Made by a program: the position numbers and the translations under genes. The notes under the pieces were generated by a model that was not told the origin of the DNA, did no database searches, and worked only from the letters and a program-made list of their open reading frames with translations. Of a stretch of 64,000 nucleotides of DNA, positions 20,637-60,933 are shown piece after piece (the first letter of the stretch is position 1; each line of letters opens with the position of its first letter). The DNA is from Fimbriosthenelais zetlandica (taxonomy: Eukaryota): assembly GCA_977030845.1 (NCBI GenBank), contig OZ365115.1, positions 17,856,001 through 17,920,000 of the forward strand. The letters are read 5' to 3'.

Positions 20637-20800
20637 TTAAAGTTGTACATCCATGTCATCGAAGTCTCTCCCAACACTGTCCAGTGTCTGTGTAGATATA
20701 CTGGTGCCGTTGCTGTAGGTTTGAGTGGCTGAGGTGGAGCGAGAAATACCACTACTAAGGGACCCGGAAGGCTTCAGTCTCTGATGCAATTCAATTTCAC
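20637..20800 (-). CDS. mtt: mGluR-like terminal coding exon (Ser/Thr-rich C-tail)
   Basis: Acceptor tttttttcag, phase 1: (G)EIELHQRLKPSGSLSSGISRSTSATQTYSNGTSISTQTLDSVGRDFDDMDVQL-TAA. Supported by splice signal and phase only; the tail is not conserved enough to recognise. Confidence 0.75.
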
Positions 20801-23800
20801 CTGAAAAAAACAAAGTAAAATCATGTATTATATAGCTTCAAATAAATGAAATATATGATACTAGTGTTTTCCCCTTTAATCGTCGCGAAACATCTATTAG
20901 ATTGGAAGATTATAGAACTTTTCTTAGGCACAAGCATCAGTGCCATCAGCTTTGTTGGCCAAGTGTCGCGCAAGTATAATCGCAACATTGGGGTCCCACT
21001 TTTTTTTGAAGTTTGAAAAGACATATATTTTACCATTCCTTCTTGCCAAGTATTTTCAGGCTGAACCAACTTAGCTACGATCTCCCTACAATGTGCATTA
21101 CGACCCCCCCCCCCCCCCCCAAAAAAAAAGTATGTGGAATGAACCTACTGAAAAAGTATGTGGAATGAACCTACGATCATGTTCCTGTGTGCTCTGGGTT
21201 TCTCATGGATCAGAAACTCTATGTTCTCATTTTGAGCATGTTCAAGCAGCTTGTAGCTCAGTGGGTTCAGGCTATATCATTGCTTAATCCCCCCCAAGTG
21301 GTGAAGTCGGAGGCATGTTTGGAGCAATTAATTTACAAGTATTGAATAAAAATGAATATGAATTTTATTAGATTGAGATTTTATATTTAATGATGTAAAT
21401 AAAGATTAATGATTTAATTTTGAATGTTAATGAATAATTGTAATAGAGAGATAAGTTGAATTTAAGGTTGAGTAGGTTGAGTAGGTTGAGAGGAGTTGCT
21501 CTGTCTGCAGTGGTCGCGAGAGTGAGCAGGAGGGGAGAGGGGAGAGAGTATATAGTGAGGAGTGGGTCAGTCACCAGGGGGAAGCAATGAGCTGTCCTAG
21601 TGCCAAAGCACATGACAAACCAATCTTCTTTGTCACCAAACTAAACCTCAACTATAGTACCATAGCCTTATGGGAACTAACCGACTTACCATCAGACTGT
21701 GTCCCTGAGTCAACTCGACAAGAAGAAGCAGCCGAGTTGATCTTAGTAGAAGTCTTTGCCATCATAGACTGTCTGATATTCCTCTCGGGGTGTAGCAGAA
21801 TAATATACATCTTAGGTGTAAACAAACATGCCAAAGATACAGTGGCGGACAGAGATATACTGAAGCACATAGTGGCCAAGCGGATCTCTATATTGTTCGC
21901 GGTGCTAAAGTAAATTGGGACGAATGCCAACCAAATGACACAAGTCGTATACATGGTGAAGCCTATGTACTTGGACTCATTGAATGCCTCTGGGATTTTC
22001 CTCGTTAAAATGGCATATATAGTACATACAATGATGAGGACAATAGGATAGGCAAAGCCAATCATGTATTGAGGTCCTACGGATGATATACAAACTAACT
22101 GATTGTCATAGCGGGTTGGATAGTAAGGTCCAGCTTTGGGTGGGCTCATCACCATCCACACAGCCCCAATAATCACTTGTAGGAAGACCAAAGCCATACA
22201 TATGAAGAGTTGCGACTTGGGGCTTATGAACTTGGGTCTCTTCACAGTACGTTTGCCTGCACGGAAGATGCGAGCAATCCGGTTGGTTTTAGTCAGCAAT
22301 GCCGAGTAACACACAGAAAAACAAAAGCCTATACCGAACTTTTGCGCACCGCAGACAATATCATTTGGCTTGAGTATGATGACAAATGTCATTCCATAGC
22401 AGAGAAGTATTCCTGCGAGAAGGACGAAACTGAGTTCGCGACCCGAGGCTTTGACGACAGGGGTCTCGCGGAACTTGATGAAGACGTAAATGACATAGGA
22501 TGTGACAATGAGACCAATTGCAGCGATTGCCATTGCAGCAATGGCAATATAGGAGTCATAGCTAAGGTATTCCAAGGGGATGGCCACACAAATCTTGAGG
22601 TCTCTTCTGGGCATTGTCCCCATAGGGCATTCCTGGCAGGCGTAGGGTGTGGGTAGGTACTGGAACTGGGAACAGGGGATGCAGGACCAGCAACAGTGGG
22701 TGTTATCAACGAAGTCCTGAGCTTCGTTGTACAAACAATTTCGACCACACATGGAAGAAGGGTGTTTAGGGCTGTTCAATGTGAACATCAGCTCCTTCAT
22801 GTTCACCTATATTGGGAAGAACATATAGAACATTTTATTAGTTTAAAAAAATGGGTATTCATCATTTTTAAAGTTTAGAACTAGTGTGAAAAACAAAGTT
22901 AAACAGAAGCAAATTGGCTATTTATATAAAGGATAGGTACCATTCAGTTTTGTAACTTACCCGAAGTTTTTTATTGTCATAAGTACCCACTGTCACCCAT
23001 TCGTAATGCCCAGGCCTGGGCTGACGGAAATTCAGGATCCTGTACTTGGGAGGTGGATCACCATTTGGTAGGAAGCGGAACTTGTGACCAGTCAATCCTG
23101 TAAATTAAAAGGCCAATGTATAAAAGATTTTGCTGTATTAGTTTGGATGAAAGCAGATCTTGTTGCGGCTTTAGTTACAACACCTATAATGGTCTCTTTT
23201 GATGGTCACAAAATGGAGAAAACAAGTTTGCAAAAAAGCGGATAAAATTGCTCTGCCTGAGTGACTACAAAAGTGGCAAAATAGAGAACGAAAAGGCTTT
23301 AAAAGTGTATTAAATGTAATATATCATCTCACCTCTGAATCTGACATTGAGGAGGTAATTTCTCAACAATTCTCCATCGTAGGGGGTCATCTCAGGGCAT
23401 AAACCAGGGTGCTCAGGTCCACCACAAAAATCCTCATGCATGTTCTGGAAAAAGGAGAAATCGGCTATTTTAAATTCGCAGATTCTGACCAATTTGAACA
23501 AAATTGGCGATATTATGTGCATACATAAGTCCTCTGATTCAAACAATCTTATTTCCATATAGTACATTTGTCAGTGTTGCTCGTTTATTTCTGTATGAAA
23601 ATCATCCCTGGTGATAATACTTCATGACTTGACAGGTTTGTTTTATCTATGATAATGAATATCTGTGAATGACATATCATTATATAGAGGGAGACATTGG
23701 GCAATTACTGCCAAAGCTGTGATGGAATGGTGGCCAATTGGTTATTTTCTTCTGTTGTTCTTATCAGCATCCAACATGCCTTATCCCCCAATCCATCAAC

Positions 23801-26800
23801 ATGACTAAGAACCAGAAAGCAGGGTAATTAATTGCTTCCAATTCCATGCCCGTCAATGGCTGAGTTAACATACAGAGATAGGACAGGAAGATTCTCAATC
23901 AGAAATACTCATAGTCTGAATATAGATGTATGTCAACGACATGATATACTGGCAGAGAAAGTTGAGAAATCTTTTAACAGGGACAAACTAAGTCTTATAA
24001 ATTAACTTGTGAAGCATAATACTTACCCTGAGGGCGAATGCAAAAGCCATAACTGAGTCGGAGACGAATTGAAGTTGTGCCTCAGGTACATAGCCATTTG
24101 TTCGGGTTTGTTTCTCCGTGCCATTACACAACTTTGAATAGTTCTGGTTGAAGGGCGTTTCTGTAATAAGAAATATGATTAATTTTAGTTTAATTTTCGC
24201 ATGATTCAACTTGCAGTGTTCAATTGGTCTTTGTTCTGGCATTTCACACCAGTGTACGCCACCCAATGTTAAAGAGTCTCCCACAATTGCAAGAAGGAAG
24301 AAGGAACCATACATTTGTACTGTGGTTTCGCATCAACTTATAGTGAACGGACTGTAGTTTGAGGCCTGATACTCTTAGCCATCTACCATTTTGATCAGAA
24401 TCTCATCACAAATAGGTTTATTTTCCTGTGCTTCAAATAAAGCAATATTCAGTATACAAGGCCTGTAGTTGATGCTATTATCTGTATTATATAGGTATTT
24501 TAATAGATAAGATGTCGGATCTGATCTAATCTAATGGTACTGTGGGATATTGGTTCTTGTTCTCAATGAATTACGACCCTATGTCTTCTTCCCATATCAA
24601 TCAATTTTTTATGTTCTCAGTCATTAGAAATTCGATCTTCACAAGCCAAAGCGTCCTTAGATCCAATGTCCATCGGTCCTCGGAATTTACTGTGAGAAAA
24701 ACTGTGTTCAAACACTGTCTTCTTATTGATTTGAATGGTCTCTGTCTTCGCTCAAAAACCTGATAGCCAGCAGTCTTTTCCCCCTTATCTGCTATTGGTA
24801 ATATTTGGGCTGACAGACGAGAAATGCCTTCTTTTAGACTCTCACAATTAATGTATTAAAAAGTTGATTGCCTGTCTGCCTGAGATGGAATAAAACCAAG
24901 GCCTTTAGAAGCTGTTTTGTTCTGGAACCAATTGGTGTCATTTCTCTCCTGTCTTCCTTTGCAAGCAATACGTTGTGGATTACTGGTTCTCGAACGGTTT
25001 TATTTTTGATTGTTGGTTTAGTCATGCCTTTCACATTTTTGTATTGGTACCTAAAGATTTTGTTTCTATGGAAAATGAGGGATTTGGAGGAAATGAACAT
25101 AATGTACTAACCTGAAGAATTGGGCAGACGACATTTAAAATAGTCCTCCCAGTATTCAATAAACCAGGGGTTGCGCATGTTCGTCTCTGGTCTCAAATTC
25201 AGAAAGTATTGCTCAAAACCACGGATTGGCTCAGCATAGGGCTGCACTGTCACCGCTCCTTCCACCTGGATAGCGAAATACAAACAAGAAAATAAGATCT
25301 ACCAACAAGAAACCAGCAACCTGCAATGATAGTACTTAGTATTTTATTTTATTTTTCAAATAATACCAGTCAAAATTGTTAGTGTTGATCATTCAACTAG
25401 GGGAAAACATTAGTGTCATGTAGTGTTTTATAAATGAAAAAACTTCAATTATTTACCTTAAAATACATTTGGTGAAAATTATAGAATAGTTAGCAAGTTA
25501 TTTCAAGAAAACATCTGTTGATCTCGGGATCAATGACGTCACTCACACTGCCAGTGGCGTCATCTGATGAATAATGTATACGCCTAATCTTCTCTATTGG
25601 CGGCAATGGAGATATTTGTTTGTATTTCGGGATAAATAAGTTTTTTGTTTATAAAACACCACAAGGATTTCTTCCCCTTTAAAAATACATTTGTACAGCA
25701 AAATGTCTAGGCCCACAAGGGATAGAACAATATGGTATGGATCATGCGTTTCAGCTTTGTGTATAGCCTACTACTGTTCTAAGATGGGAGAAAGTGTTGA
25801 TACATATAAACAAATCAGTAGATAACATTGATGTATAATCATGTCACATCATGTTTTTCTCACCTGAGCTTCATTGCCGTCTGATACGAGCACACGGCCG
25901 CCCCAGCCGTCTGATCCTATAAAGGTGAAGTAGCCAGTCAGGTTGTTCCTGTCTATGGCTCTCATTAATTCACCCACTTCTTGGTCCGACCCAAAAACTA
26001 TCACTCCTGAAATGATATACGTGAGCTACATCATAGAACCGTATAGGAAATGGTATAATAATAGCAATTATACACAACAGCCATTTAATATTAACTTTTA
26101 TGCAATCAGTATGAGGTAGATAATACATTCAAATTCAGCAAATACCGAGTCTGCAGCCAATATTATATGAATGAATAGATGAAGAATATTCTGGGAATGA
26201 CATAGTACCTCAGTGCTTCTTGCTCTAATTGGGAATATTGATCATATTTTAAAGAGTTTCATTCCAAACAAATAAAATGGTACCTTCAATGATAATTAAA
26301 CTGTGTTCGTATAATGGGAAATACAATGATCGTTAGATAATTATCTATAAATCTATTCAAAGACTATAGCTTTCATCTCAGGGGTCTAAGAGTAGGCCGG
26401 TAGATAGAAATGCTAGCATCCTTTGATAACCAATATAATAATGCACAAGTCTGGAAGAAAGTCGACATCACATCCATCAAATAATTAATTCTTGACTTTT
26501 CTCTATTCTAAGGATATCTATAAAGCCTTTTTCTCCGCTCAGTAGTCGGGGACTTCCATCAGGAGGAGAGCTAATGTATTTGTCAATTGCCTGCTTTGCC
26601 TTCTTCCTTCAGACATCACAGATGAGCTATATCAATGTAAAGAAGGCAGTTCAGCTTTAAAGAAAGACATCTCAGGCAAACTTCACATAGCTTCCCTCGA
26701 GGAGGAGGAGGAGGAGGAGGACTCCCCATTCCATCTTTACCTCAGATAAATGATCGCTATTGGAAGCTTCTTGTAATTATCCAACACTTGGTATTATTGG

Positions 26801-29800
26801 TATGCAACATCAAGCGGGAAAAACAAGAGGCGTTGGCGACACGGTTTATAACAATGCTGGCAACGTTTCAGAGATGCAAAACAATAGAAGGCACACATGA
26901 TTAGAAGTAATTAGTCTAAGGGATCAAACATCACACTCCCTATGGCACTTTAATCTTTATATTTCTAAAGAAATATTTCAGGGTAAATTAAGCCACCTGG
27001 ATATAACCCGACATCCACTGTACGATCTTTGAGAGCACCGATTTTTGTGATCGGCAAAAATCAAATCGTTACGGATCATTTCTCTATTGATTTACCATTC
27101 GGCACCGATCCCACGATTTTGGCATCCACCAGCCCGATCATTGGAACGGATCTTTTTATTTGGGTCCCGATCGATCGTCTGTGATCACTTAAGATCGCAA
27201 AATCGGGCTGGTGGATATGGGGCTTATAACTCCCACCTACAACCTCTTCCGAGGTCATTTTAGGATAAAGACGATTTATAAGTTTAAGGGATCTACTTCG
27301 TTAATAGAGCATGTTTTTTTAATCTCTTGGCCTTTATATTAGAGTATCCCATCTCGTGGAACTAGACCCGTGATATCATTATTCTTAGCAAATTGCCTCC
27401 ATCCGTAACCCCTGTAACTCTAGCTTTGTCACGGTAAAGTAGCTTAGCACGTTAGAGAGGAGATATCACGCTTTTAATGACCCTTCACTTCTTTAAAGTT
27501 AAATGAGTAATGAGTAATTATGGCGCGTTTTTTTGTTCTAATCCATTACAGATCTGCCTCTTGGTGACACCCAGTCTCTCTCATTAGTAAAGGATCACTC
27601 CAATTAAAGGAGGGGCCAGCGAAAAAATATGGGTCAGAAGTTTTATTCTTCTCTAGATGGATGAAGTGATAAAGTGGAGGAGAATTGCCTGGTGAATGAT
27701 CGAGCATTTGGAGGGCATGTATCTGATAAGATTGCTTGATAAAATGTGGCTTATCTCAGCCAAAAAGTATTTAATCTAGCCCAATATTGTGCAATTAAAG
27801 ACACATTTATTATTAAGCATTTCCAGGGGGACCTCTCAAATAATCTAATATGCTTATAATTTAATACATGTAACAAAATGGGATTATTTGTGGGGTGGGT
27901 GGTTAGATACAGTGCTGTTTAATGATGGTTGTAAACTAGTGTATTAAAATTATTATGTGCGCATGGTTGGTTTAGTACCTATTAAACCAATACATCATTC
28001 TTGCGTTTATAATAAATTGGCGTTTAAACGTTAGCAAGGAATAATACACCACGGTACAATGTCTCGGGAAATTGCTCGGTAAATCACGTATGAAATATGT
28101 GCGGAATTGAAATGTTGTGCAGCACAGCCATGATAAAAAACTTTCTAAGAGAGAGGCTAAGGAAAGTCGTGATGACAAAGGAGGGAAAAATAAAGATAAA
28201 TATTTTACCTCTTGTATTAGTTTTCTTCAGATCGTGCACGATTTTGTCATAAGCTGAAGCCACCGCTACTCCCGAATCTTTAGTCAGTTTGGCTGTGGTG
28301 GCTAAACAGATTCCTTCCTGCTTCAGTAATTCTTCTACTTCGGCAAACCCCTGAAAAATGATAGCGAAATATTAACAATAACCACGTGCTGAATATTGCA
28401 TAATATTTCCACAAAAAGATTCAAAATTTGCTTACCAAATTTCATAATGTATGAAATTATCTCAAAATGATTCAAAATTGAGCATATTTTATGCACCAAT
28501 TTGACATAGGAAAATGTGTGGGAAAATGAATGAAACATAGAAAAACAAACCATTTGGCCGTATGAACTCTCCTCGTAGACGCCAGCCACGTATGTCCAGT
28601 TGAAGAGCTTGACCAGTTCCACCATAGCCTCAGCCTGGTTCTTGTCAGATGGGATAGTTCGCATGAAGAATGGATACCGCTGCTCCGAACTGAGAGCTGG
28701 CGATGAGGAGAAGAAGCTCACCTGTGGTCAAGAATCAGTCCAACAATTAAAGACAGATAGCAGGGACCTATTACAAAAGAAAAATTATCAATGCTAAGTC
28801 TATGGCTAATTTTTGTTTTAAAATGGGCTCCAGAACACCGGTATGTATCATCTGCATGTCCCACCATTCCTGGGATCTAAACATGACTTAGCAACTAGAC
28901 TTAGCACGGCTGTTATGAAACAGGGCCCAACTTAGGAACATGATCTAGGCCTAGCTATATGACTGAATCCTTGACTGAGTGGCTACACGGACCAGGGGCC
29001 TATTTCAAAAGAAAAATTAGCAATGCTAAGTGTATGCCTAACTTGTGTTTTCATATGGACTCCTGGAGCCAATTTCAAAACAAAAATTAGCCATAGACTT
29101 AGCATTGCTAATTTTTCTTTTGAAATAGGCCCCTGGAATCAAGATGGGCGGGGTGAACAAACAGTAACATATTAACCCTTGAAAAATATACAGGAAAGAT
29201 ATTTCAAATTAGATTCACTTTTATGAATGAAATCAAAATGCAAACGTTGCTGATATAGGTATAGGCATGTATAGTCTGCACCCCAAGCCAGATACATGAT
29301 TGCGGTACATCCCTGAAGAGTGTGTCAATTGACAAGCAATAAGACCTCTACTTCGTGCAGTATTAAATCCCAGAAAGTACAGGAGTGTCGGGGGCCTCTG
29401 GTATTTAATTCCAATCACATAGGAGACCATTGTCAATATTGATATGTACACAGTTGTACTTCAAAGATGATCTTATTTGATATTCTGGGCATAGAAAACT
29501 GGAATTTTCTGCCACAGCTTGGAACACATCAGTAGAATGATAACCCTTAGGTCCTTGACCAAAAAAACAGGAGCCATGCCCCACTATAGCAGCAGCCCAC
29601 GAATTTCTTTATCTTTTTGTCATGTGAAAATACTACAGCAATCTTGTTTAGCTGGTTTGTTCTGACCTTATTGGAAATGGGTAAATCATTCAATTCATGT
29701 CCCGTGAACAGCAATCTGAGGTGATTGAGGTCCAATGCCTTTATAGCTCACTCACGAGTGGAACTGCATATTGATGCACATGTGGCTAAGTAACATCCTC

Positions 29801-32800: not shown

Positions 32801-35800
32801 AAGTGTGAGCCTGAAAAGAAAATGACGTGAGAATAAAAATAGGATAATAAGGACCCAGACATTGAGGCATTCAAAAGGACTATATGAATATCCAAACCCT
32901 GTCAAAAATCTTTTACTCTGTTTCATAACAAAGTGTTGGGTCTTATACTTCAAGAGGAGGGGAGTTAGCTCAGTTGGTAAGAGCGCCAGCTCATACAGGC
33001 ATGGTTGACCAATGATCGAAAGGTAGGCGGTTCAATCCCCTGAGCTGTCCAATGGATTTCCAATGCCTCCCTCTTCAGGGTGTTGGCGTGTTGTATATTA
33101 TGGTCTAAAGCACATGCAAATAAAAATATCCATTGCACAGAAGGCAATGTAGTAATGCACATAGAAAAGAGCCCCCAGCTGAAAATCGTACAAAAGCTTG
33201 AGTAATCAAGGGTATAAGCTGGTATCCACCCATAACAGGCTCTGTAAAAATTGTAACTAAAAAAATACTTGTTTGTATATCCCCTACTTTTCATGCAATG
33301 ACACACCATGGCAATTTCCCCTTACCTTGCAATAGGTCAACTCATTAGAAAACACCTCAATATTTTAGAATATATAAGGGGACCACCCTGTCCCAACTTA
33401 AATACATCACAATCTTTCTATAGGTCTCCAGAGACTTCTATAGACTTCTATAATGCCTTATTAACCCAAATAAGGCATTATTAACCCAAATAAGGCATAC
33501 ATTCTATAATGATCAGGATCCCATGGGGCCATGATCTGCTTAATGTACCCCAGCCCCATCCTACCGGCATTCGTCGAGCTCTCACATTTTTAATCCCTCA
33601 AAGTACTGCCAAGGCGTCCTCATTACCCTTAACTTGCTTTTGTCGGCTCCTGATTTAAGGACGCTAATCCCATGTTCTCATGCCTTTAACGCCTCTTTTT
33701 CACCTCGGTGCAAAAGTCATAACATCCTTGTATGGGAGATTTGGCTCCTTCAAACTGCTCTTTACTGACATTTGGTATTTGTCAGAGGCTCTAATTCTAT
33801 TAGATCATCTCTGTCAATGGCTTCAATTACCCTCAATCAAAATCTTTTGTCCCCCGCCGATATTCAACTTTCGAGGATCCCAAATGAATTACAGGCAAGT
33901 TGGTAGTCTGCACAACCCGAAAGATTGTTTGCCAAGTGCAAACTCATTCAACTACAATGTGACACATTTCATTAAAAATTTGTCTGACTGTAAAAACTTG
34001 AAATAATTTATACAGCATCCTGTTCAGGATACAACTGCATGCCTTTGACAAACATGTAATTTAATGGAACTTTTTCAACAAGCAACCATGGCTCTTGAAG
34101 ATCCGAACATTTTTCATTCAATTCCTAGACGATCCTTCAATATAAAACTATTTGGTATTTTTTTTGCACTGGTACTGCATGCGAAACGTCGGTTTATTTT
34201 TTTATTGATGGAATTTCAACCATAGTATTTACAGAGAGGAAAGGCATTTGGAACCTGCAGATTCCTCCTCCAGCCTGGAGTTGGGGAATCCCTCACGTGC
34301 CAAGTATTTGTTTCCATCCTATAAGATGTGTATGTCATCAGTTGATATGTGGCAGTGCAGGAATGGGCGCCATTTTCTACAGTCGGCCTAATCTGATCGA
34401 ATGGCAATGTCAGCAGGACCTGTTCCTAATTAGACCAAGCATGAAAAATGCTGGCACCATCTCCCCCCGCCATAAGATTTAACCATATCTCTACATCTTA
34501 TGTCACATTGACAGTTGCTGATGCCAGACAAGTCACTCTATATTCATAAATCGAGGAGAAAGGAAAACAACAGGTCGCTGAGCATATCAAATGATTGACG
34601 CTTACCGTTATACATTGGGAGCCAGAAGAGTATCTCACCCAATTTCCCAATTTATATAACTCGTATAGCCTACGTTCTGGAAGACCATATTTGGGTGAAA
34701 AGGCCAAGACAATAACAATCCTGGGCAGAGCTCCCACAAGTCTGGTTAATCAAATATCTGGCTACTTTCCCAGACATGTTCCAGGTATACTACTGTCGGT
34801 TGAGGCAAAGTCCTAGAACCTAAGAGCCCACGGATTTGAAATTTCTTTGAATCACAATATTATACCTTCCCGAATCAAAGACGTGACCTTTGATACAGTA
34901 GGATCAACTTCAGTGCCTGGGGACGTGTTTACAATAGCAGCAAAGGTAAGGTATCCAGGGAGACAGGATGCTGCTAATAAGGCATGCTTTAGAATCTAAA
35001 AGGCTAATCAAACTGACCCCCAGGCCCATGGGTCAGTGACTGGGCAATAATTGGAGCACGTTCAGGGCTTACAAGCCTAAATCCCATTACTCGCAAAGGG
35101 TTCTCGAAGGTTTCTATGTTAAGAGCTAAACATAAGATGGACTTTGATAGAGCAAGGCCGACCTTATTAGGATAGTTTGTTGAGAGTTGAACTCCCCTAT
35201 GGGGGGAGTTTCTATAGTGTGGCTCCAAAGTCCAATATTTCAATGTAAAGATGACTGGGTGGAGGTGGTGCCTCTCATCCTATAGCTGGTATTCTTAGAT
35301 GTCAGGGATGTAGAGAAGGTTGGTGAAGGTAACAATCACTGTCTGAAGTCTGGCTAATGTATGGCCAGGCATCAGACACAGTCTCTGATGTATGATGCAC
35401 TTTTTAAATTTTTTTCCCTCCTAAAACTTTTCTTTGTAGGAAAAACAGTCTTCTACAAGAGCAGAAGAACACACACCTTGCAGTAAATTAGTTGCAAAGG
35501 TTGAATTGAAGATGTACACTGCTCCTGCTACAGGTTTTGAAAACTTTATTTTACTTACTACGTACGCCCTTCGGCGTTTTATGAGGTGGTTTATATGCAA
35601 CAGTTTCTATTGAATCACAAGATACATTCCTCTCATTGTCGGTTGGATTTTTCACAGACCTCATAGTATATTACAGGATTACAGGACCGTGCTGTAAAAT
35701 GTCCCTCATTTACAGGGGGTCTTGTAATCATTTCCATAGGATTATAGGCCAAATTACAGAACCGACTAATTTCCAGACGATTGTAAAAGATCCCCCGTGC

Positions 35801-38800
35801 AATTCGTGCCAACTGGGCAAATCAGGCTAATAGAAACCGTGGATTACAGGACCCCCTGTAAATTTTACACGACGGATTTGCTGTGTATGTAGTTCTGAAG
35901 TTACTTCTCTTCTTCTCTTTCTTAACTACACTTAAGAAAAGCCAGTTCATTTCTTTTCAGTGGACGTGATTCTTGATTTTTTAAAGCCTTGTCTTCCAAC
36001 AAGTGAATTGAAAATATCTTCATTATGTGCTGTTCTGAAACCCTTGCTTCTTTGTCTTTGCAAACCTCCTTTTACCGATATCTGCATTTATTTCCATTCA
36101 GCTTCCTTGACGGCTTGATTGCGCCTTTCCTATGCCTGTCAGCAATGGGGTCTATCGGTAGTATTTTGGAGGCAATTGGTTAATGAATACAAACCATTTT
36201 GTGATCGGTGCAGGATGCAGGCAGCGATAACAAGTGCAATTGTCACTGTTCTGCATGATACTTTCAGCCCAAACCAAGCTACATTCATATCAAATTCAAT
36301 TAGCGTTGATTTCTGATGTTGAAAAAGCCTGGAAAAAGTCCCATTGTGAGAAATTCAATTGGGATCATGCCTTGGATAATAAAGCTCAATAATGCGTGTA
36401 CAGCCTTTACTCGATTTTCCATTACAAACTAGAGTACATTCGGTTCAGGATAGTCCTGAGTATACATTAGGAAATTGGTGCATACGTTTTACACCCGAAG
36501 CTCTATTAGAAGTGATCCTTGGTTAGAAAGCAAAGGCCTCGGTGATTCCTGACTCGAATCACAGAGCTGGTCATTGCCTGAAATATCACCTCTTTCCATA
36601 CATTTGCTTCAGGTTTGCCATTTGGAATTTGACCAAAGGAAAGGCCAAGAGGGGCTAGTCAGAATCCCAAGTAAAGGCTGATTAGATTAGGTACTTTTCT
36701 ACAGAAGCAAAGGTTTTCCACTAATGATACTATATATGCGGGCTGGAAACTGGGAGATGTCTGGTATGGAATAACATTGCATCTTATGTCAGGTTCAGGT
36801 ATACGACCTGAACACAGAATGTGACACGGTCTTCACACATTACTCTGAATGCTGTTGAAGCAATTCTTACTACATTATGGACCAACAGAAGAATTAAGCC
36901 TGGAATACACTAATCCGATTCTACAATCTGTCGCCATCCGAACCTCCATTTCTATTGGCATCCAATGATTGAAATTTTGTCGGTAGTTAGCCCTACCTAG
37001 GTGTAATTGACTGTTCAAATTACAAGCATTTGGTGTGAGCAGAAACATAGTTTTGGAGAGCTATCGGATGGATCCGGACGGAGAATCGGATTAGTGTGTT
37101 CCAGGCTTTAGTAGCAGAACGGTATACGAACCAATCTATGACGATGAATTTACGAGACCAGAAATAATGTCAAAAAGACCATTATCGTTGTTTATTTTAC
37201 AGAATAAATCAAGAATATATGATGGTCCATTCAAGGGATCCACTCTCATAAGGGCATTTTAGGGCAACATGTGAGTGAGGCAATACTTTGATGGGAAGGT
37301 CATAATGCCTGGATTATTCCCATAAAACGTTGCCACAATAATCAGCAAAGGGTTGGAGTCATGATGTACTCTCTCCCACTTGCTTCTCCCTTCAAAGTGG
37401 GTGCCTTTCATGACAAGGCAGTTTGCACTACTGTAATGGACCCGAAGGGCTGAACCAAGCATCACATAGGTTGGTGGTACTTATACTTATAGGGTTCCAT
37501 ACTCCACGCACATTAAAACTTGGGGGTACGCTGTCATGCCCCTGATAAGAGATTCCTTTTGATGTATGGCCTCTTCCAGGTTTTCACTGCATGACATTTA
37601 CCGAGCGTGCAGGTGGCCGTAGTGAGTCCATATCGGGTGTATGGGTGATGATAGCCTCTCAAGCTCAGAGCAAGTTCTTCTGAGTAAAAGTCAAAGTTCA
37701 CTAGCGAGATTCTCAACCTTATCAAAATTCACTCCGACCACAGGTTCCTTCCTACTTGTGGTGCTCAAGGAATGGTTCCCACCAACATAGTGTCCAGGGT
37801 CTGCTTTGTCTGGCAGGAAAAAAGTACAGGTCTTTGTTCTGGCTTCAGATTTGTGTACGGTACTGAATATTGCAGCATATATATACTGAATATAGATGTT
37901 AAATTCTAGGTTAGTGATATCTGTTTTGAAGGCATTCTACTAGTACCAGATACCATTCAGCCAAAGCAATATTGAAGCACAATACACAGAATGGCTTGGA
38001 CCCTATTTTGTGCAGTGACCATGTCAAACGACCTCTGGACTGCTTCTCTTGATTGGTGCCAAACCATCATCTATCTCCCAAATGCCTGTCACCAAATGCA
38101 ATGGGAAACACTGGCGAAAAGCTCATCGTTCCAGTGAAATTGGAAAAATCGCTGGAGAAGTTAATAGACATTTATAATTGAAAATTCAGCTAACACCTTG
38201 CCATTACGATCAACTTAAAAACACATTATATCAGACATATGCTCCCGATGTCAGGATAACACTGAAGCTCACGTCTTCATTACAACCATTGATCGAGCCT
38301 GACAGGCTTATTTAGCAGCATGTTAGATCGCCAACATATCTCCTAGCAGCGATATAAAAAGCCTGATGCCTATCCCATAGTTACTACCCATACTGGCTTG
38401 AAAGTGTGAACGAATGGAAGCGCAGAGGAGCATGAAATAGAATCAGAACGCCCTGACCGTCAATTGTGGCCAGGTCACGTCCAGCACTTAGGTCACCAGT
38501 GCGCATGACCAGCCATGGTGACGTCGTCCTTTGCGTCCCACGCTTATGATAAATGCTTTTAGCGGTAGGTGGCGGGAGGGTAGGAGATTCTGACTGCAGG
38601 CAGAACTCTCCTCGAGTAGCTCCCTAGCCTCATTCAACGTAATTGCTGCATTGTTGGAAGAAGGCAAGGCAGTGCTGCGGGGTACAATGTAACGTCTCCG
38701 CCTGGCAAAGATTCTCGACTTAATTGATGCCCTAGGGTAATTCAGCAATATACCTGTTGCATTGCTATCCACATTGCTAGCAGTATTGCAAACATATAAT

Positions 38801-41800
38801 AATCCCACCCGCAGAGAAAACCCCAAATCAGTGCAACAAAGGAATGGCACCACAAGAAATAACGGTAGATCGCCAATACATCATAGAATAATATTCACTG
38901 TTATACATTATAAGTGAACCATTATTTCCGAAGTTTCAGTTCACAGATCCATATATTCATACTAAATCAATAGAAGCATTCATGAATGTCAGAAAATGTC
39001 AATCTGTCCATGGATTAGACCCTGGGGTGAATTGATTTGAGATCTTCTGAGGTTCCTCTGTCAATCATAAACCCTTCAAGCCTTGTATTTTGGGTTCTCA
39101 CACCAATGATACTAAAGCCCATATTCCACTGCTGCGATTGTCCTTACGACACTACTGCGACAAAAGTGATTCTTGTATCGCAATGAAATTTATAATTGTG
39201 GTTGAAGTGGCCAAGGCCTTAAGGCCGTCATCCACTGGTACATTTTACATTGCCACACAAGCATCGCCTTTCTCGCAGTAGTATCGCAAGCAAAATCGCA
39301 GCAGTGGAGTATGGGCTTAAGAGTCATTGACCAGAGAAACAGAAGCTTATCATCAAATAATAAATGGCCATCTTATGACATTGCTTCAAGAAAGTACAGG
39401 ACGTGGTCAACCAAAATCATTTCATGGGAAACAGGCCAAGTGGAATGATAGTGATTTTGGTGGAATTGGAATGTATGCTAATGCCTGGATTGTGCATGGG
39501 TCCCAATGCTTGCAGGTAGAGAAATGGCATGAGACCTTTGTAGTCATTGGTAATGGCATGCTAAGGGTAAAGCCTATTCCTCCCAGGGACGCTGGGGAGT
39601 GGGAGGAAAAACGAGTTTGATATCGACCAATCACCAGTCACCTCATGCCATGTGGTCATGAAAATTGTGTGTGCTTTAAAGGCGACGTTCATGGAATAAT
39701 GTCATACACCAGTGAAAATATTAAAGATTTTGTCCCTTGAAAGACAATGACATGAACTAGAATTTCTTTCCAAGTGGGTAATCTAAGCAATTTGCCATCA
39801 AGTGATTCTATGCTGAGCACTTGAAGAGCCATCCTTCGGACGTGATTTGATTTCCTGTTTATAAATGTGACAAAAGGAAATGGGAGCTGGGCTAGTGAGC
39901 TTGTATAGAGGTCGACTATTGGAAGGATGTAAAAGTACAGTCATCAGCATCCATTCCAGCAGCGTTTCTCTGGTACTGAACATTCCAGGAAGTCTTACAC
40001 CCCAAGGAAATATCCAACAGTTCCCAAGTATAGATGGAATTCCAAAAGTTTCCCCATGTTCTGATCCTGCTAACTGTGAAAGGTGAATGGGGGTGGGGGT
40101 TGCATCAGAATGACTTAGTGACCAGTACAGGATTAATCTGATTGGTCGGGCAGTGGGTCACGTGTTGCCTTTCATGTGGTGATGTGAGATAATTGTATCA
40201 GCTTTAATGAATCACATTGCCACATGAGTGGGGAGGCATGGAGGCCAGAGAGGAAATGCCTGGTCTCAGACATAGAGAGAGAGAGAGGCATTGGTTGGTG
40301 AGTGGGTGGTGGTAGGGTAGAGGTGGTGTCAGGGAAAGGAGTGTTCGGATCAAATAAGGTCAGGAAGGGGACAATTCGACAAGGCTAATAACTCCGCAAA
40401 GTTCATCCTTTGTCCCCTGGTAAATCCTTCAATGAAGGCTTACACAGGTTCTATACAAAGACTGCTTTGTACGTATAAAATCAATCACTCGAAGGCAATG
40501 AAGCTTTATGTGGCTTCTGAGTTGGAATATATCTCTTGATGTAACCAGTCTCAGAATCATATATACATTGAGGCATGGAAACTATACCCAGAAGACAGAC
40601 AGTTGTTCTCGCTAAAGTTTACATAAAATCACAGCATTCCTATTCCAGACTTGCAGTTTTTTCTATTAAATCTTACCAGATGGCCATTCCTTCTGAGCAA
40701 ATGATAATTCATTTTTCATTTTCATATGCTACAATTTTACTGCCGTGACCAATGTGATGTTTGTGTCGCAATGACAAATGTACCAGTGTAGTACGGCTTT
40801 AAGTCCTTGAACACCTCAAGCCAATTTCATAACAAAAATTAGCCATAGACTTAGCATTGGTAATCTTTCTTTTGAAATAGGACCCTGGACCACAATATAA
40901 TAATTTCATTGCGACACAAGAATCATCTTCGTCGCACTAGTGTCCCAAACACAATCACATCAGTGGAGTACAGGCTTCAAATAGCTAGTGTTTCTATTTT
41001 GCGACTTTGTGATGAAATCAAACTTCTCTGCATGAGCCATTCCACTAGAAGACTAGATGAGGACTCCGTTTACATGTAATATCTACAGATATATAAGCAA
41101 TAACCAAAAGTGTGCAATACTGGTACTGATCGACCCTCCCCAGCACCTTGGACCTGGGGCCTGTTTCAGAACAACCATTAGCAATGCTAAGTCTATGGGA
41201 AATTTTGACGCTGAAACAGGCCGCAGCTGGCGGTAGCTATAGAGATCCAGCTCCATAGCGTTGTCAGTACTGTCATTTAGCCTACCAATCTCTCTGATTT
41301 CCTTTCACCCAAGGGTTAAGACCAAAATACCTCTGTGACTACGGGAGGCTAATTTGTCATCATGAGCTCTGCTGGGGACCAATTGCTTCTAGTTTTGTAA
41401 AACTCATCCTGCATGGACATAGTTTTCCCTTGATAGGAGAGGCGGGCTGAGAGGGGCTGAGAGGGGCTGAGAGGGGCTGAGGTCTTAACCCGATCATCCA
41501 TATCAGCCTACATACCCTAAATAGATGTGGCCTTCCAATCGAGAGCCCTATTCCTAACTCCCAAAACTCATTGTTTGAAAGCGTCTACAGTTTTACCTCC
41601 ACAAGGAATGGCTTGTCACTACCATTCATGGGTTGGGTCTCTTTTGTCTTGAAGACTGTGCACTATTTGTGAAATCCATTAGATAAGCACATTGCAATCT
41701 TATAATTGCGCACATTCTAATGAAGCCCTTTTCACTAATGGCCAAGAGAGACTGTGGTAGATAGAAAGCCCAATTCATGGCCTACTAACCCACATATTCA

Positions 41801-42326
41801 ACGCCCAACATCGTCTAATTTCAGATGAAAAGGAGAAGATGGAGAATAAAATCAAATTTGTTAAATGTAATGAGGTTGTCACAAGAAGTTCGTCCCTCCT
41901 AGGTGCAAATTGGTGTATTCAAACATCCTACTGCTACAGGGTCTATTAATTAATCAATATTTACATTCTCCTTTAAGAGATCGTATAATGAACATGGCAG
42001 GATTGCTGGCTTCCTTGATGTTGGAAGATACAAAGTGACATCTGACAAAAGCTTGTTGCCCTTTGAACGAAGCAAGTGCTTCTAAGCGACCCACCATCTT
42101 GTCCAATAGTACAAAGAGTACATATAGATCTGCTACTCTTACTTCATACAAAATAGCTGTTACAAAGATTGAAGACAACCTACCTGTGGTATTTTGAAGA
42201 GTTTGAGGAGGTTGGCTACTTGTATTGAGGTGACACTGGAGGGCGCCCCGACCACTCCAGCTATCATCTGTGGTTTAGACCCATCTTTACACTCATATTG
42301 TGAACCGCCGATGTTACTGATAGAGC
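20637..42326 (-). CDS. mtt: Metabotropic glutamate receptor-family class C GPCR, mXr/mangetout (class IV mGluR)-like; 5'-incomplete, 10 exons, ~804 aa visible
   Basis: Join (minus): 42326-42184, 28721-28551, 28350-28209, 26006-25864, 25265-25112, 24160-24027, 23444-23333, 23097-22961, 22806-21690, 20800-20637. All introns are GT-AG with consistent phases. Venus-flytrap domain, 9-Cys domain and 7TM are present (KASGRELS, LLTKTNRIARIF, PEAFNESKYIGFTMYTTC, FTPKMY). Motifs GSISNI, VSFFS.SP.LS, KDSGVA, FGSDQEV, LVSDGNE, QLQFVSD.V match my recall of Drosophila mangetout/DmXR. The symbol is the fly orthologue name and was not confirmed by phylogeny. Confidence 0.92.
21690..22806 (-). CDS. mtt: mGluR-like exon encoding the cysteine-rich domain, 7TM and proximal C-tail
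   Basis: Track ORF 21652..22806. Nine Cys in PSSMCGRNC...HCCWSCIPC...ACQECP...KIC, then seven hydrophobic segments; donor GATG/gtaagt at 21689; 1117 nt. Confidence 0.96.
22961..23097 (-). CDS. mtt: mGluR-like exon (VFT C-terminal end)
   Basis: (G)LTGHKFRFLPNGDPPPKYRILNFRQPRPGHYEWVTVGTYDNKKLR; donor gtaagt; 137 nt. Confidence 0.93.
23333..23444 (-). CDS. mtt: mGluR-like exon (VFT)
   Basis: NMHEDFCGGPEHPGLCPEMTPYDGELLRNYLLNVRFR(G); donor gtgaga; 112 nt. Confidence 0.93.
24027..24160 (-). CDS. mtt: mGluR-like exon (VFT)
   Basis: (E)TPFNQNYSKLCNGTEKQTRTNGYVPEAQLQFVSDSVMAFAFALR; donor gtaagt; 134 nt. Confidence 0.93.
25112..25265 (-). CDS. mtt: mGluR-like exon (VFT)
   Basis: VEGAVTVQPYAEPIRGFEQYFLNLRPETNMRNPWFIEYWEDYFKCRLPNSS(E); contains RNPWF..W; donor gttagt; 154 nt. 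Confidence 0.94.
25864..26006 (-). CDS. mtt: mGluR-like exon (VFT)
   Basis: (G)VIVFGSDQEVGELMRAIDRNNLTGYFTFIGSDGWGGRVLVSDGNEAQ; contains the GSDGW motif; donor gtgaga; 143 nt. Confidence 0.94.
27006..27224. mobile_element. MITE family 3 (AGCCCGACATCCAC ends)
   Basis: Related copies at ~46762-46980 (reverse), 47494-~47630 (truncated) and ~55013-55174; shared internal GATCGGCAAAGATCAAAAT and GGTCCCGATCGCCTGTGATC. Confidence 0.8.
28209..28350 (-). CDS. mtt: mGluR-like exon (VFT)
   Basis: GFAEVEELLKQEGICLATTAKLTKDSGVAVASAYDKIVHDLKKTNTR(G); 142 nt; not in the ORF track (no ATG). Confidence 0.92.
28551..28721 (-). CDS. mtt: mGluR-like exon (VFT)
   Basis: VSFFSSSPALSSEQRYPFFMRTIPSDKNQAEAMVELVKLFNWTYVAGVYEESSYGQM; 171 nt; donor gtttgt. 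Confidence 0.94.
28995..29133. mobile_element. MITE family 2 (~67 bp unit, GGGCC..GGCTC ends, CWG flanks); here two units in inverted arrangement forming a palindrome
   Basis: Core TTAGCAATGCTAAGTCTATGGCTAA. Other copies at 1668-1733, 28764-28830, ~40816-40885, 41157-41223, 42417-42534, 49718-49784, 54259-54327 and a short one at ~55908-55952. CAG direct repeats flank the copies at 1668, 28764 and 54259. Confidence 0.8.
32958..33110 (+). mobile_element. tRNA-derived SINE head or tRNA pseudogene
   Basis: A box TAGCTCAGTTGG (32966-32977) and B box GGTTCAATCCC (33029-33039); spacing is extended and there is no clean acceptor stem. Confidence 0.55.
35670..35890. repeat. Interspersed repeat built of TTACAGG/CCTGTAA words; related copy at ~43590-43745
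   Basis: Both loci carry ATTACAGGACCGT and repeated TTTACAGGG / CCTGTAAA words in inverted arrangement. Confidence 0.5.
36897..37107. mobile_element. MITE family 1, copy B
   Basis: TTA-AGCCTGGAATACACTAATCCGATT...GATTAGTGTGTTCCAGGCT-TTA; internal sequence shared with copy A. Confidence 0.85.
39116..39317. mobile_element. MITE family 4 (AGCCCATATTCCACTGCTGCG ends, TAA target duplication)
   Basis: TAA-AGCCC...GGGCT-TAA. A second copy lies at 56028-56216, also TAA-flanked; fragments at ~40735-40800 and ~40900-40977. Confidence 0.8.
42184..42326 (-). CDS. mtt: mGluR-like exon (VFT lobe I)
   Basis: (G)SISNIGGSQYECKDGSKPQMIAGVVGAPSSVTSIQVANLLKLFKIPQ; acceptor tttcag, donor gtaggt; 143 nt. Confidence 0.94.
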
Positions 42327-45300: not shown

Positions 45301-45459
45301 TGCTGCTCCCACATTGATTTATTGTTGCATGGTTGAGTCTGATGTTGCCAAGACACAATAGATGGCATTGTGTGTGCACCACGGTCGATTCCCCTGATCA
45401 GGCAACTAACCCGACAAGTGAGGGAATCTAGAACAGTCAGTACTTCATTCAGTCTATTA

Positions 45460-45661
45460 AGCCTGGAACACTAATCCGATTCTCCAATCCGTCGCCATCC
45501 GAACCTCCATTTCTAATGGCATCCAATGATTGAAATTTTGTCAGTGTATAGCCTTACTGAGGTGTAATTGACTGTTCAAATTACAATCATTTGGTGTGAA
45601 TAGAAATATTGTTTTCGACACCTATCGGATGCATCCGGATCGGATTAGTGTATTCGAGGCT
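45460..45661. mobile_element. MITE family 1, copy C
   Basis: TTA-AGCCTGGAACACTAATCCGATT...GATTAGTGTATTCGAGGCT-TTA. Confidence 0.85.
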
Positions 45662-46006
45662 TTACGGTGGAGGACTTGGTGGTGGCACAGGGAGAGGTAT
45701 ATATCACAATTTGTAAAGTATAATCCTATATGAAAGTGACATTTTAAGAAAGCACTAACTATCACAAAAGCCTCCTTAGTGATACAGGACGGTTGGACAA
45801 TCCACCATCCTGTATGAGCACTGTTTCATGCAGTGGGAATTCACCTGAAACTCAGGGCAATTTGAGAGATGCCGTGTCAACTGATAGCCCAGGTGGCTGT
45901 TTCTATAGTCATTTTAGTGAATTTATTCCCATATTTAATCACCCCTAGTGTTTAGTAAATGATTCAATGGCTGTAAAATGAAAATCTAGGCCAATTTTTT
46001 TCATCG

Positions 46007-48686: not shown

Positions 48687-48840
48687 NNNNNNNNNNNNNN
48701 NNNNNNNNNNNNNNNNNNNNNNNNNNNNNNNNNNNNNNNNNNNNNNNNNNNNNNNNNNNNNNNNNNNNNNNNNNNNNNNNNNNNNNNNNNNNNNNNNNNN
48801 NNNNNNNNNNNNNNNNNNNNNNNNNNNNNNNNNNNNNNNN
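48687..48840. other. Assembly gap (154 N)
   Basis: Run of n characters; the true length is unknown. Confidence 1.
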
Positions 48841-60721: not shown

Positions 60722-60933
60722 AGCCTGGAATACACTAATCCGATTCTCCAATCCGTCGCCATCCGAACCCGCCATTTCTGATGGTATCCAATGATTGAAA
60801 TTTTGCCACCGGCTAGCCTTACCTAGGTATAAAGATCTGTTAAAATTACAAGCATTTGGTGTGAAGAGAAATATAGTTTCGGAGAGCTATTGGATGGAGC
60901 CAGATAGCGAATCAGATTAGTGTGCTCCAGGCT
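60722..60933. mobile_element. MITE family 1, copy D
   Basis: TTA-AGCCTGGAATACACTAATCCG...GATTAGTGTGCTCCAGGCT-TTG (right target duplication has one change). Confidence 0.85.

What the first reader, a model, noticed from the sequence alone, without database searches (positions are those of the whole stretch)
20637..42326. Orphan-type mGluR (mXr/mangetout, class IV) with a remodelled ligand pocket: probably not a glutamate receptor
Seen in sequence, aligned by eye to mGlu1/mGlu2 motifs: the alpha-amino-acid-binding residues are kept (Ser in GAPSS = mGlu1 S165; Asp in RTIPSD; Tyr in SYG = Y236; Asp in GSDGW = D318). The Lys that holds the distal carboxylate of glutamate (mGlu1 K409/mGlu2 K377) is Gln in PEAQLQFVSD, and mGlu1 S186 is Phe in VSFFS. 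Established knowledge, from recall: the same Lys-to-Gln and Ser-to-Phe changes characterise Drosophila DmXR/mangetout, which is glutamate-insensitive and has no established endogenous ligand, and this clade was lost in vertebrates. One further difference: the alpha-amino-binding Thr (mGlu1 T188) is Ser here (FFSSSP), whereas I recall FFSTSP in the fly protein. Inference: this is a receptor for a different amino-acid-like ligand in a marine invertebrate, which may be an uncharacterised signalling system.
Basis: partly seen in the sequence, partly recalled or inferred. Interest (0 to 1): 0.75.

Follow-up and report, generated by a model that had tools for sequence, protein, structure and literature searches.

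The report
Class IV (mangetout-type) mGluR gene
This is an intact gene for a mangetout-type (class IV) relative of the metabotropic glutamate receptors in a marine invertebrate; its binding pocket lacks the residues that hold glutamate's side chain, but the class and this pocket change are already published, so it is an ordinary new member.

Summary
Every cited motif lies on the minus strand at the stated places, in a cleanly spliced 11-exon class C GPCR gene of 1011 aa. Exons 2-11 span window 42326-20637.

Proper alignments give R78A, S186F, T188S and K409Q, with S165, D208, Y236 and D318 kept. A maximum-likelihood tree puts the protein in the mangetout / bee mGluR-B subclade (100/100). That subclade sits inside class IV (100/100). 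An AU test rejects grouping with class II (p = 9e-5). The same genome also holds canonical mGluR-like genes that keep Arg78 and Lys409.

Ramos-Vicente et al. 2018 described class IV in all bilaterian phyla except vertebrates, with exactly these R78/K409 replacements. The only private feature is Ser at the otherwise invariant T188 column. It is real (two codons differ from seven relatives) but conservative.

The ligand is still unknown. No RNA data could be obtained. Other class C receptors lacking glutamate side-chain residues were already noted elsewhere in this genome by this scan.

The parts
42184..42326 (-). Exon 2 (143 nt). Venus-flytrap lobe 1. Holds the loop Cys (YECKDG) and GAPSS; Ser236/Ser237 correspond to mGlu1 S164/S165 (codons 42240-42235).
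   Evidence: tblastn of six orthologues; junction scoring with canonical AG/GT sites; Pfam ANF_receptor; column mapping.
28551..28721 (-). Exon 3 (171 nt). Holds VSFFSSSP: Phe258 at the S186 column, Ser259 at A187, and Ser260 at T188 (codon 28706-28704). Also holds RTIPSD Asp280 (D208) and SYG Tyr308 (Y236).
   Evidence: Pfam ANF_receptor E = 5e-19; phmmer to mGlu5, mGlu1 and other solved chains; relatives all read FFSTSP.
28209..28350 (-). Exon 4 (142 nt), Venus-flytrap domain.
   Evidence: tblastn; canonical splice sites.
25864..26006 (-). Exon 5 (143 nt). Holds VFGSDQ, with Ser365/Asp366 at the E292/G293 columns, and GSDGWGGR, with Asp391 (D318) and Arg396 (R323).
25112..25265 (-). Exon 6 (154 nt), Venus-flytrap lobe 2.
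24027..24160 (-). Exon 7 (134 nt). Holds PEAQLQFVSD; Gln486 lies at the K409 column (codon 24077-24075).
   Evidence: phmmer alignment to mGlu8 EGKVQF.
23333..23444 (-). Exon 8 (112 nt), end of the Venus-flytrap domain.
22961..23097 (-). Exon 9 (137 nt), linker to the cysteine-rich domain.
21690..22806 (-). Exon 10 (1117 nt). Nine-cysteine domain plus the complete 7TM domain, ending at a GTAAGT donor after TQSD.
   Evidence: Pfam 7tm_3 253 bits and NCD3G 32.6 bits; 9 Cys counted; E = 4e-102 to solved mGlu2; donor sequence.
20637..20800 (-). Exon 11 (164 nt including the stop). Cytoplasmic tail ending DMDVQL.
   Evidence: In-frame polypyrimidine-AG acceptor; 87% amino-acid identity to the matching exon of a related species (L011/L012); the same tail occurs in the annotated Pomacea protein P0215.

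Best explanation
The region holds exons 2-11 of the single class IV metabotropic-glutamate-like receptor gene of this genome. The gene belongs to the subclade that contains Drosophila mangetout/DmXR and bee mGluR-B, which I call IVa here.

Shown: the encoded protein has the full class C layout. It has a signal peptide, a Venus-flytrap domain, a nine-cysteine domain, a 7TM domain with the PKxY motif, and a C-terminal tail ending in Leu.

Inferred from family knowledge: it works as a dimeric G-protein-coupled receptor in which closure of the flytrap around a small ligand activates the 7TM domain.

Shown: the residues that clamp the alpha-carboxylate and alpha-amino groups of an amino acid are kept (S165, D208, Y236, D318), with Ser in place of T188. 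The residues that hold glutamate's distal carboxylate are replaced (Y74G, R78A, S186F, E292S, G293D, K409Q).

Inferred: the ligand is an alpha-amino-acid-like molecule with a non-acidic, probably longer side chain, and is not glutamate. Apart from T188S, the pocket signature matches that of insects, a scorpion, a flatworm and a snail. An old, shared endogenous ligand is therefore more likely than a plant toxin.
For: Gene model:
- Canonical splice sites at all ten junctions and no stop codons.
- Exon 1 lies on the same contig and strand, 61% identical to the scorpion orthologue.
- The last exon is conserved in a relative and in Pomacea.

Family: Pfam ANF_receptor, NCD3G and 7tm_3; PDB hits to mGlu2/3 at E = 1e-102.

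Clade:
- The protein is 55-58% identical over about 830 residues to the arthropod proteins I place in IVa. It is 61% identical to the Pomacea protein, and 34-45% identical to everything else.
- In the careful LG+C20 tree, QUERY+Pomacea gets 98/88, IVa 100/100 and class IV 100/100.
- The AU test rejects union with class II: delta lnL 326, p = 9e-5.

Link to published names:
- The bee cluster is named 'metabotropic glutamate receptor B'.
- Mangetout is listed as mGluRclassIV_Dme, and CapteG168165 (my P0073) as class IV, in the eLife supplement.
- The fly sequence reads GGIQALEAM and SYFSTSP.

Pocket: 14 of 15 columns are identical to all seven other IVa proteins compared, excluding the more divergent Lingula paralogue P0151.

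Constraint: exon 3 is about 95% identical in protein to relatives while synonymous sites are saturated, pS = 0.75.

Contrast within the genome: paralogues L001-L003 keep GIQR / GMHR, and L001 also keeps ESK.
Against: No expression data: no RNA or DNA run was listed for this sequence. Transcription, the 96.5-kb first intron and the exon 10-11 junction therefore rest on sequence conservation only.

No functional data exist for any non-insect class IV receptor that I found, so glutamate insensitivity here is extrapolated from DmXR. R323, a secondary contact of the distal carboxylate in mGlu1, is retained.

The Thr whose mutation to Ala abolishes the DmXR response (T176A) is Ser here, so the pharmacology may differ from the fly's.

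The tree's outgroup is two class C paralogues from the same genome. The position of class IV relative to classes I-III is therefore not settled; here it is sister to II+III, whereas the paper has it sister to I-III.
Confidence: 0.9

Rival explanations
1. The lineage-specific changes at and next to the pocket have retuned this receptor to a ligand different from that of other mangetout-type receptors. The changes are T188S, L-to-T at the residue after Ala78, and A-to-G before R323.
For: Ser260 is unique among all class I-IV rows compared and among seven relatives, including close species from marine metagenomes. The change involves two adjacent codons (TCA TCG against ACC AGT), so it is not a one-base error. 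It occurs in an exon under strong constraint. T176 is functionally critical in DmXR. Two more of the 18 private changes lie beside pocket residues.
Against: Thr-to-Ser keeps the hydroxyl that contacts the alpha-amino group. From recall, the calcium-sensing receptor has Ser at this column and binds L-amino acids. Two class C paralogues from this genome also have Ser there. Only 18 of 266 IVa-invariant columns differ, and mostly conservatively, which looks like ordinary drift. The A-to-G change is shared with the relative L011, which shows it is older.
Confidence: 0.1
2. It is a conventional glutamate-activated mGluR of class I, II or III, and the odd residues are alignment artefacts.
For: The best PDB matches of the 7TM exon are mGlu2 and mGlu3. 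Automatic names of orthologues say 'metabotropic glutamate receptor 2/4/6-like'.
Against: The R78 and K409 columns are Ala and Gln in three independent alignments. Class IV has 100/100 support, and the AU test rejects class II. The genome has separate canonical mGluR genes.
Confidence: 0.03
3. It is a decaying or non-ligand-binding copy, for example a silent dimer partner or pseudogene, and not an autonomous receptor.
For: No transcript evidence could be obtained. The first intron is very long (96.5 kb), and exon 1 carries an unusual basic low-complexity insert.
Against: All eleven exons are open with canonical splice sites. The amino-acid backbone contacts, nine CRD cysteines and the PKxY motif are intact. 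Protein conservation is strong although synonymous sites are saturated.
Confidence: 0.03

Closest known systems
Drosophila DmXR / mangetout (mtt, FBgn0050361) and its insect orthologues (bee mGluR-B)
   Same: It is in the same subclade with 100/100 support and 55-58% identical over about 830 residues to the dipteran, bee and scorpion orthologues. The pocket signature is the same: G74, A78, S164, S165, F186, S187, D208, Y236, S292, D293, D318, R323, Q409. The tail ends in Leu, as in most orthologues.
   Different: Ser replaces the Thr equivalent to DmXR T176, whose mutation to Ala abolishes the L-canavanine response. The host is a marine spiralian, not an insect. The N-terminal extension is basic low-complexity sequence unrelated to the insect extensions. 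No pharmacology is available.
Class IV mGluRs as defined by Ramos-Vicente et al. 2018 (eLife 7:e35774)
   Same: It meets their description. It is placed outside classes I-III. Arg78 and Lys409 are replaced non-conservatively, although Lys-to-Gln is polar and not the non-polar or acidic replacement they describe. The backbone-binding residues are kept. Their set already includes a gastropod (Lottia) and an annelid (Capitella) member.
   Different: My tree splits class IV into two parts. One is a strongly conserved mangetout-type subclade (IVa). The other is a second grouping (IVb; Capitella, Owenia, scallop, nemertean, centipede, hemichordate, crinoid). Its six-row protostome core has 100/99 support, but the whole grouping only 81/45, and its pocket is variable. 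This gene is IVa. I found no clear IVb gene in this genome.
Group II mGluRs (mGlu2/3, DmGluRA)
   Same: They are the best solved-structure matches of the 7TM and flytrap exons, with the same domain layout and dimer-loop cysteine.
   Different: Group II receptors keep R57/R61 and K377 (mGlu2 numbering) and bind glutamate. Here those columns are Gly, Ala and Gln. A clade with class II is rejected.
Broad L-amino-acid sensors of class C (calcium-sensing receptor, GPRC6A, T1R1/T1R3)
   Same: They share the alpha-amino-acid clamp without the glutamate-specific distal residues. From recall, the calcium-sensing receptor has Ser at the T188 column. T1R1, T1R3 and the calcium-sensing receptor all match exon 3.
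   Different: They are much more distant in sequence: about 200 bits against 345 bits for the 7TM exon. They are not the clade in which this protein sits.

Membership tests
Class C GPCR, mGluR-type architecture | Venus-flytrap (ANF_receptor) domain, nine-cysteine domain and 7tm_3 domain in one polypeptide | tested here: met
   Pfam ANF_receptor on exons 2, 3 and 5; NCD3G 32.6 bits, which is below the 38.9 cutoff for the exon taken alone; 7tm_3 253 bits. Nine Cys counted in the CRD. The model is contiguous and 1011 aa long.
Class IV mGluR (Ramos-Vicente 2018) | Falls in the clade outside classes I, II and III | tested here: met
   Class IV clade of 17 rows has 100/100 support. It includes Capitella CAPTEDRAFT_168165, which the paper lists as class IV. 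The AU test rejects class II.
Class IV mGluR (Ramos-Vicente 2018) | Arg78 and Lys409 (mGlu1 numbering) replaced non-conservatively | tested here: met
   Ala161 and Gln486. Gln is polar and neither non-polar nor acidic, but it removes the positive charge.
Class IV mGluR (Ramos-Vicente 2018) | Residues contacting the amino-acid backbone conserved (S165, T188, D208, Y236, D318) | tested here: met
   S237, D280, Y308 and D391 are identical. The T188 column is Ser260, which keeps the hydroxyl.
Class IV mGluR (Ramos-Vicente 2018) | Not activated by glutamate | not testable with these tools
   Needs heterologous expression. It is published only for the fly receptor.
mXR / mangetout orthogroup (IVa) | Clusters with dipteran mtt orthologues and bee mGluR-B | tested here: met
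   Nine-row clade with 100/100 support. The hoverfly P0010 is nearly identical to fly mtt in the segments shown in the eLife alignment.
mXR / mangetout orthogroup (IVa) | Distal-pocket signature G74, A78, F186, S292, D293, Q409 | tested here: met
   All six residues are identical to those of the insect, scorpion, flatworm and snail members.
mXR / mangetout orthogroup (IVa) | Activated by L-canavanine, blocked by N-methyl-L-arginine, dependent on the T176-equivalent Thr | not testable with these tools
   Pharmacology comes from PMC2695807. The Thr is Ser here.
Canonical glutamate-activated mGluR (classes I-III) | Arg at the R78 column and Lys at the K409 column | tested here: not met
   Ala and Gln here. 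All 10 class I rows that cover the R78 column, and 8 of 9 class II rows, have both R and K.

The most novel reading that the evidence does not exclude
The Thr-to-Ser change at the universally conserved alpha-amino contact, together with two neighbouring private changes, has shifted ligand affinity or specificity in this lineage. Comparing this receptor with its Thr-bearing marine relatives would then give a natural handle on the still unknown endogenous ligand of mangetout-type receptors.
Probability: 0.1. Interest if true: 0.45.

Novelty: new member of a known kind. Interest (0 to 1): 0.25.

Why it matters
The endogenous ligand of mangetout-type (class IV) receptors has been unknown since 2004 and was still described as unknown in 2024.

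This gene adds one point. Apart from one conservative change, the distal-pocket signature of the insect receptor is kept unchanged in a marine spiralian that cannot meet the legume toxin L-canavanine. That supports an ancient shared endogenous ligand over a toxin-sensing origin.

However, class IV in molluscs and annelids, and the pocket argument, are already in the literature. This locus therefore confirms the existing picture and does not open a new question. Its practical value is a correct annotation: automatic names such as 'mGluR2-like' would wrongly imply glutamate signalling.

Tried and rejected
- **5' exon inside the window:** scanned minus-strand open frames from 42400 to 64000 and ran tblastn with the N-termini of six orthologues. 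Nothing was found. The exon lies 96.5 kb upstream, so 42327-64000 is intron 1.
- **Read-through ending of exon 10** (stop at 21652, 969 aa): set aside in favour of the spliced exon 11, which is conserved in two other species.
- **RNA and DNA read evidence:** two run searches listed nothing.
- **Modelling the flytrap domain:** This step was not done.
- **Relative P0026:** no DNA was available. The 10-kb flanks of L011/L012 stop short of exon 3. The T188 column in relatives was therefore read from exon-sized ORF fragments and their contigs.
- **First tree attempts:** They were replaced by a quick LG tree and a careful 32-row mixture tree.
- **IVb paralogue in this genome:** the best match to the Owenia IVb flytrap domain is the class II-like gene, at 39% identity.
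- **Other ORFs:** Pfam on six other long ORFs of the window gave nothing.


Full report
**1. Observation**

Stop-to-stop frames and tblastn with six full-length relatives show ten coding segments between 42326 and 20637. Pfam finds ANF_receptor on the early exons. On the large exon it finds NCD3G and a complete 7tm_3 domain at 253 bits. That exon matches solved mGlu2/3 at E = 1e-102. The window has one assembly gap, at 48687-48840. It lies in intron 1 and was left alone.

**2. Gene model**

Each junction was chosen by enumerating GT/GC donors and AG acceptors and scoring the joined peptide against six orthologues. Every junction has a canonical, polypyrimidine-preceded AG and a GT donor.

| Exon | Window coordinates (minus strand) |
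|---|---|
| 2 | 42326-42184 |
| 3 | 28721-28551 |
| 4 | 28350-28209 |
| 5 | 26006-25864 |
| 6 | 25265-25112 |
| 7 | 24160-24027 |
| 8 | 23444-23333 |
| 9 | 23097-22961 |
| 10 | 22806-21690 |
| 11 | 20800-20637 |

- **Exon 11.** It is reached from a GTAAGT donor. It is 87% identical in protein to the matching exon of a related species (L011/L012). It ends like the annotated Pomacea protein. I therefore prefer this model to the read-through ending at 21652.
- **Exon 1.** The missing 5' exon is not in the window. A search of the whole assembly found it on the same contig and strand at G000:C25:17994818-17995436, which leaves a 96.5-kb first intron. It opens with a signal-peptide-like Met. It then has about 80 residues of basic low-complexity sequence, followed by the start of the flytrap domain.
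- **Product.** The full product is 1011 aa.
- **Transcript data.** None could be obtained, because no run was listed.

**3. Pocket residues**

A MAFFT alignment of 56 full-length family members was anchored on a salmon mGlu1 carrying the classical motifs. It gives the following columns for this protein:

| mGlu1 column | Residue here |
|---|---|
| Y74 | Gly |
| R78 | Ala |
| S164 / S165 | Ser / Ser |
| S186 | Phe |
| A187 | Ser |
| T188 | Ser |
| D208 | Asp |
| Y236 | Tyr |
| E292 / G293 | Ser / Asp |
| D318 | Asp |
| R323 | Arg |
| K409 | Gln |

Independent phmmer alignments of single exons to solved structures agree. The match to the 490-residue 1EWK chain fits the published mGlu1 numbering.

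**4. Classification**

- **Sequence similarity.** A full HMMER scan of 1.8 billion representatives with the 7TM exon shows a step in the scores. Sixteen clusters lie at 54-80% identity, and everything after them is at 50% or below. The named clusters in the top group are bee 'metabotropic glutamate receptor B', dipteran, lepidopteran, hemipteran, beetle, scorpion and Lingula proteins, and a Pomacea protein.
- **Tree.** In a careful LG+C20 tree of 32 rows, the query is sister to Pomacea (98/88). It lies inside a nine-row mangetout-type clade (100/100), which I call IVa.
- **IVb.** IVa joins a second grouping, which I call IVb. It holds Capitella, Owenia, scallop, nemertean, centipede, hemichordate and crinoid proteins. 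Its six-row protostome core has 100/99 support. The grouping as a whole has only 81/45, because the long hemichordate and crinoid branches attach weakly.
- **Class IV.** IVa and IVb together form a 17-row clade with 100/100 support. That clade excludes classes I, II and III, which are marked by fish mGlu1, fish mGlu2, ant mGluR and Saccoglossus mGlu1- and mGlu8-like proteins.
- **AU test.** Forcing the query into class II costs 326 log-likelihood units (AU p = 9e-5).
- **Link to the published class.** The eLife supplement lists mangetout as mGluRclassIV_Dme and CapteG168165 (my P0073) as class IV. Its alignment shows the fly protein with GGIQALEAM and SYFSTSP.
- **Contrast within the genome.** The same genome carries class I-, II- and III-like genes. 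All three keep Arg at the R78 column (GIQR or GMHR). In L001, where the open frame reaches that far, Lys409 (ESK) is also kept. I found no clear IVb gene.

**5. The private feature**

The pocket signature is identical in all IVa rows from insects, scorpion, flatworm and snail. The one exception is Ser at the T188 column of the query; the Lingula paralogue is more diverged.

Seven relatives read FFSTSP (or FFSTSH/FFSTSS), with Thr at that column. They were recovered as exon-sized ORFs or from their contigs, several of them from marine metagenomes. At the DNA level the window has TCA TCG where the three relatives read at the DNA level (six contigs, L013-L018) have ACC AGT, so two codons differ. 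The change is therefore real and not a single-base error.

Exon 3 is about 95% identical in protein to those relatives, while synonymous sites are saturated (pS = 0.75). The gene is therefore under strong purifying selection. Across the whole protein, 18 of 266 columns invariant in the other seven IVa proteins differ in the query. Most changes are conservative, and two lie beside pocket residues. I read T188S as ordinary, conservative lineage-specific drift. A modest retuning remains possible, because the equivalent T176A mutation kills the DmXR response.

**6. Mechanism**

Shown: the class C architecture is intact, the amino-acid backbone clamp is kept, and the two basic residues that bind the distal carboxylate are lost.

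Inferred from family knowledge: the receptor acts as a dimer, ligand-induced flytrap closure activates it, and it couples to a G protein.

Inferred from DmXR: it is insensitive to glutamate. The fly receptor responds to L-canavanine (EC50 0.5 mM), is blocked by N-methyl-L-arginine and ignores L-arginine (PMC2695807). Replacing Y74 and R78 with Gly and Ala should enlarge the distal pocket, which gains Phe and Asp. That fits a longer, non-acidic side chain. This last step is speculation.

**7. Comparison with the literature, and novelty**

Ramos-Vicente et al. 2018 (PMC6307864) named class IV. They showed it in all bilaterian phyla studied except vertebrates. They reported non-conservative replacement of Arg78 and Lys409 in every member, with backbone contacts kept. 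They concluded that these receptors probably bind another amino acid. A 2011 flatworm study made the same residue argument (PMC3261222). A 2024 paper still calls mtt an orphan (PMC10815649).

This locus is thus a new member of a known kind.
- the complete gene model, with its distant first exon;
- the IVa signature, invariant except at one column, contrasted with a variable IVb pocket;
- the private T188S change.

Earlier notes of this scan flag other class C receptors in the same genome that lack glutamate side-chain residues. I did not test those.

Noticed in passing
L004:1509-2127 (G000:C25:17994818-17995436, outside the window): Exon 1 encodes about 80 residues of strongly basic low-complexity sequence between the signal peptide and the flytrap domain, with several di- and tribasic clusters. 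IVa orthologues also have N-terminal extensions, but these are unrelated in sequence. A short W-P-x-basic motif just before the flytrap domain is shared.
   Followed up: partly
L011:4164-4454 and L011:8847-10882 (likewise L012): In a related species from an ENA assembly, exons 6 and 7 are one continuous open frame, and the cysteine-rich domain is split from the 7TM exon by about 0.9 kb. Intron positions have therefore changed between close relatives. The two loci, L011 and L012, are near-identical copies (haplotigs or a recent duplicate).
   Followed up: partly
window:14079-16020: A large inverted repeat with two 676-nt arms, 87% complementary and 590 nt apart, lies downstream of the gene. It may be a foldback-type element.
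   Followed up: no
window:28754-29137, 40808-40889, 42458-42539, 49708-49789: A short interspersed element of about 82 nt, partly palindromic, recurs six times in the introns. In translation it gives the recurring ISHRLSIANFSFEIGP-like peptide seen in several frames.
   Followed up: no
window:7786-9116, 36894-37111, 45455-45672, 60719-60937: Four copies of another interspersed repeat of roughly 200-250 nt, at 60-89% identity.
   Followed up: no
G000, many contigs (for example L005-L010, and C25:31003750-31008717): The genome holds at least 30 intronless open frames of 700-800 aa encoding class C GPCRs with flytrap domains. Three were used as the outgroup. They lack R78, and two of the three lack K409; two have Ser at the T188 column.
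   Followed up: partly
alignment (rows P0059, P0122, P0062, P0090, P0029, P0135, P0104, P0049, P0073, P0103): The second class IV grouping (IVb) has a variable distal pocket: column 78 is E/I/T/P/L/F, column 186 is A/W/H/L/Q/M, and column 409 is M/K/I/S/Y/N. The mangetout-type subclade is nearly invariant at these columns. This suggests one conserved ligand for IVa and diversified ligands for IVb.
   Followed up: partly
G000:C19:34200062-34204285, C19:34234732-34238166, C27:1946742-1950317: These are canonical class II-, III- and I-like mGluR genes of the same genome. The class II-like and class III-like first exons lie only about 34 kb apart on contig 19, in opposite orientation.
   Followed up: partly
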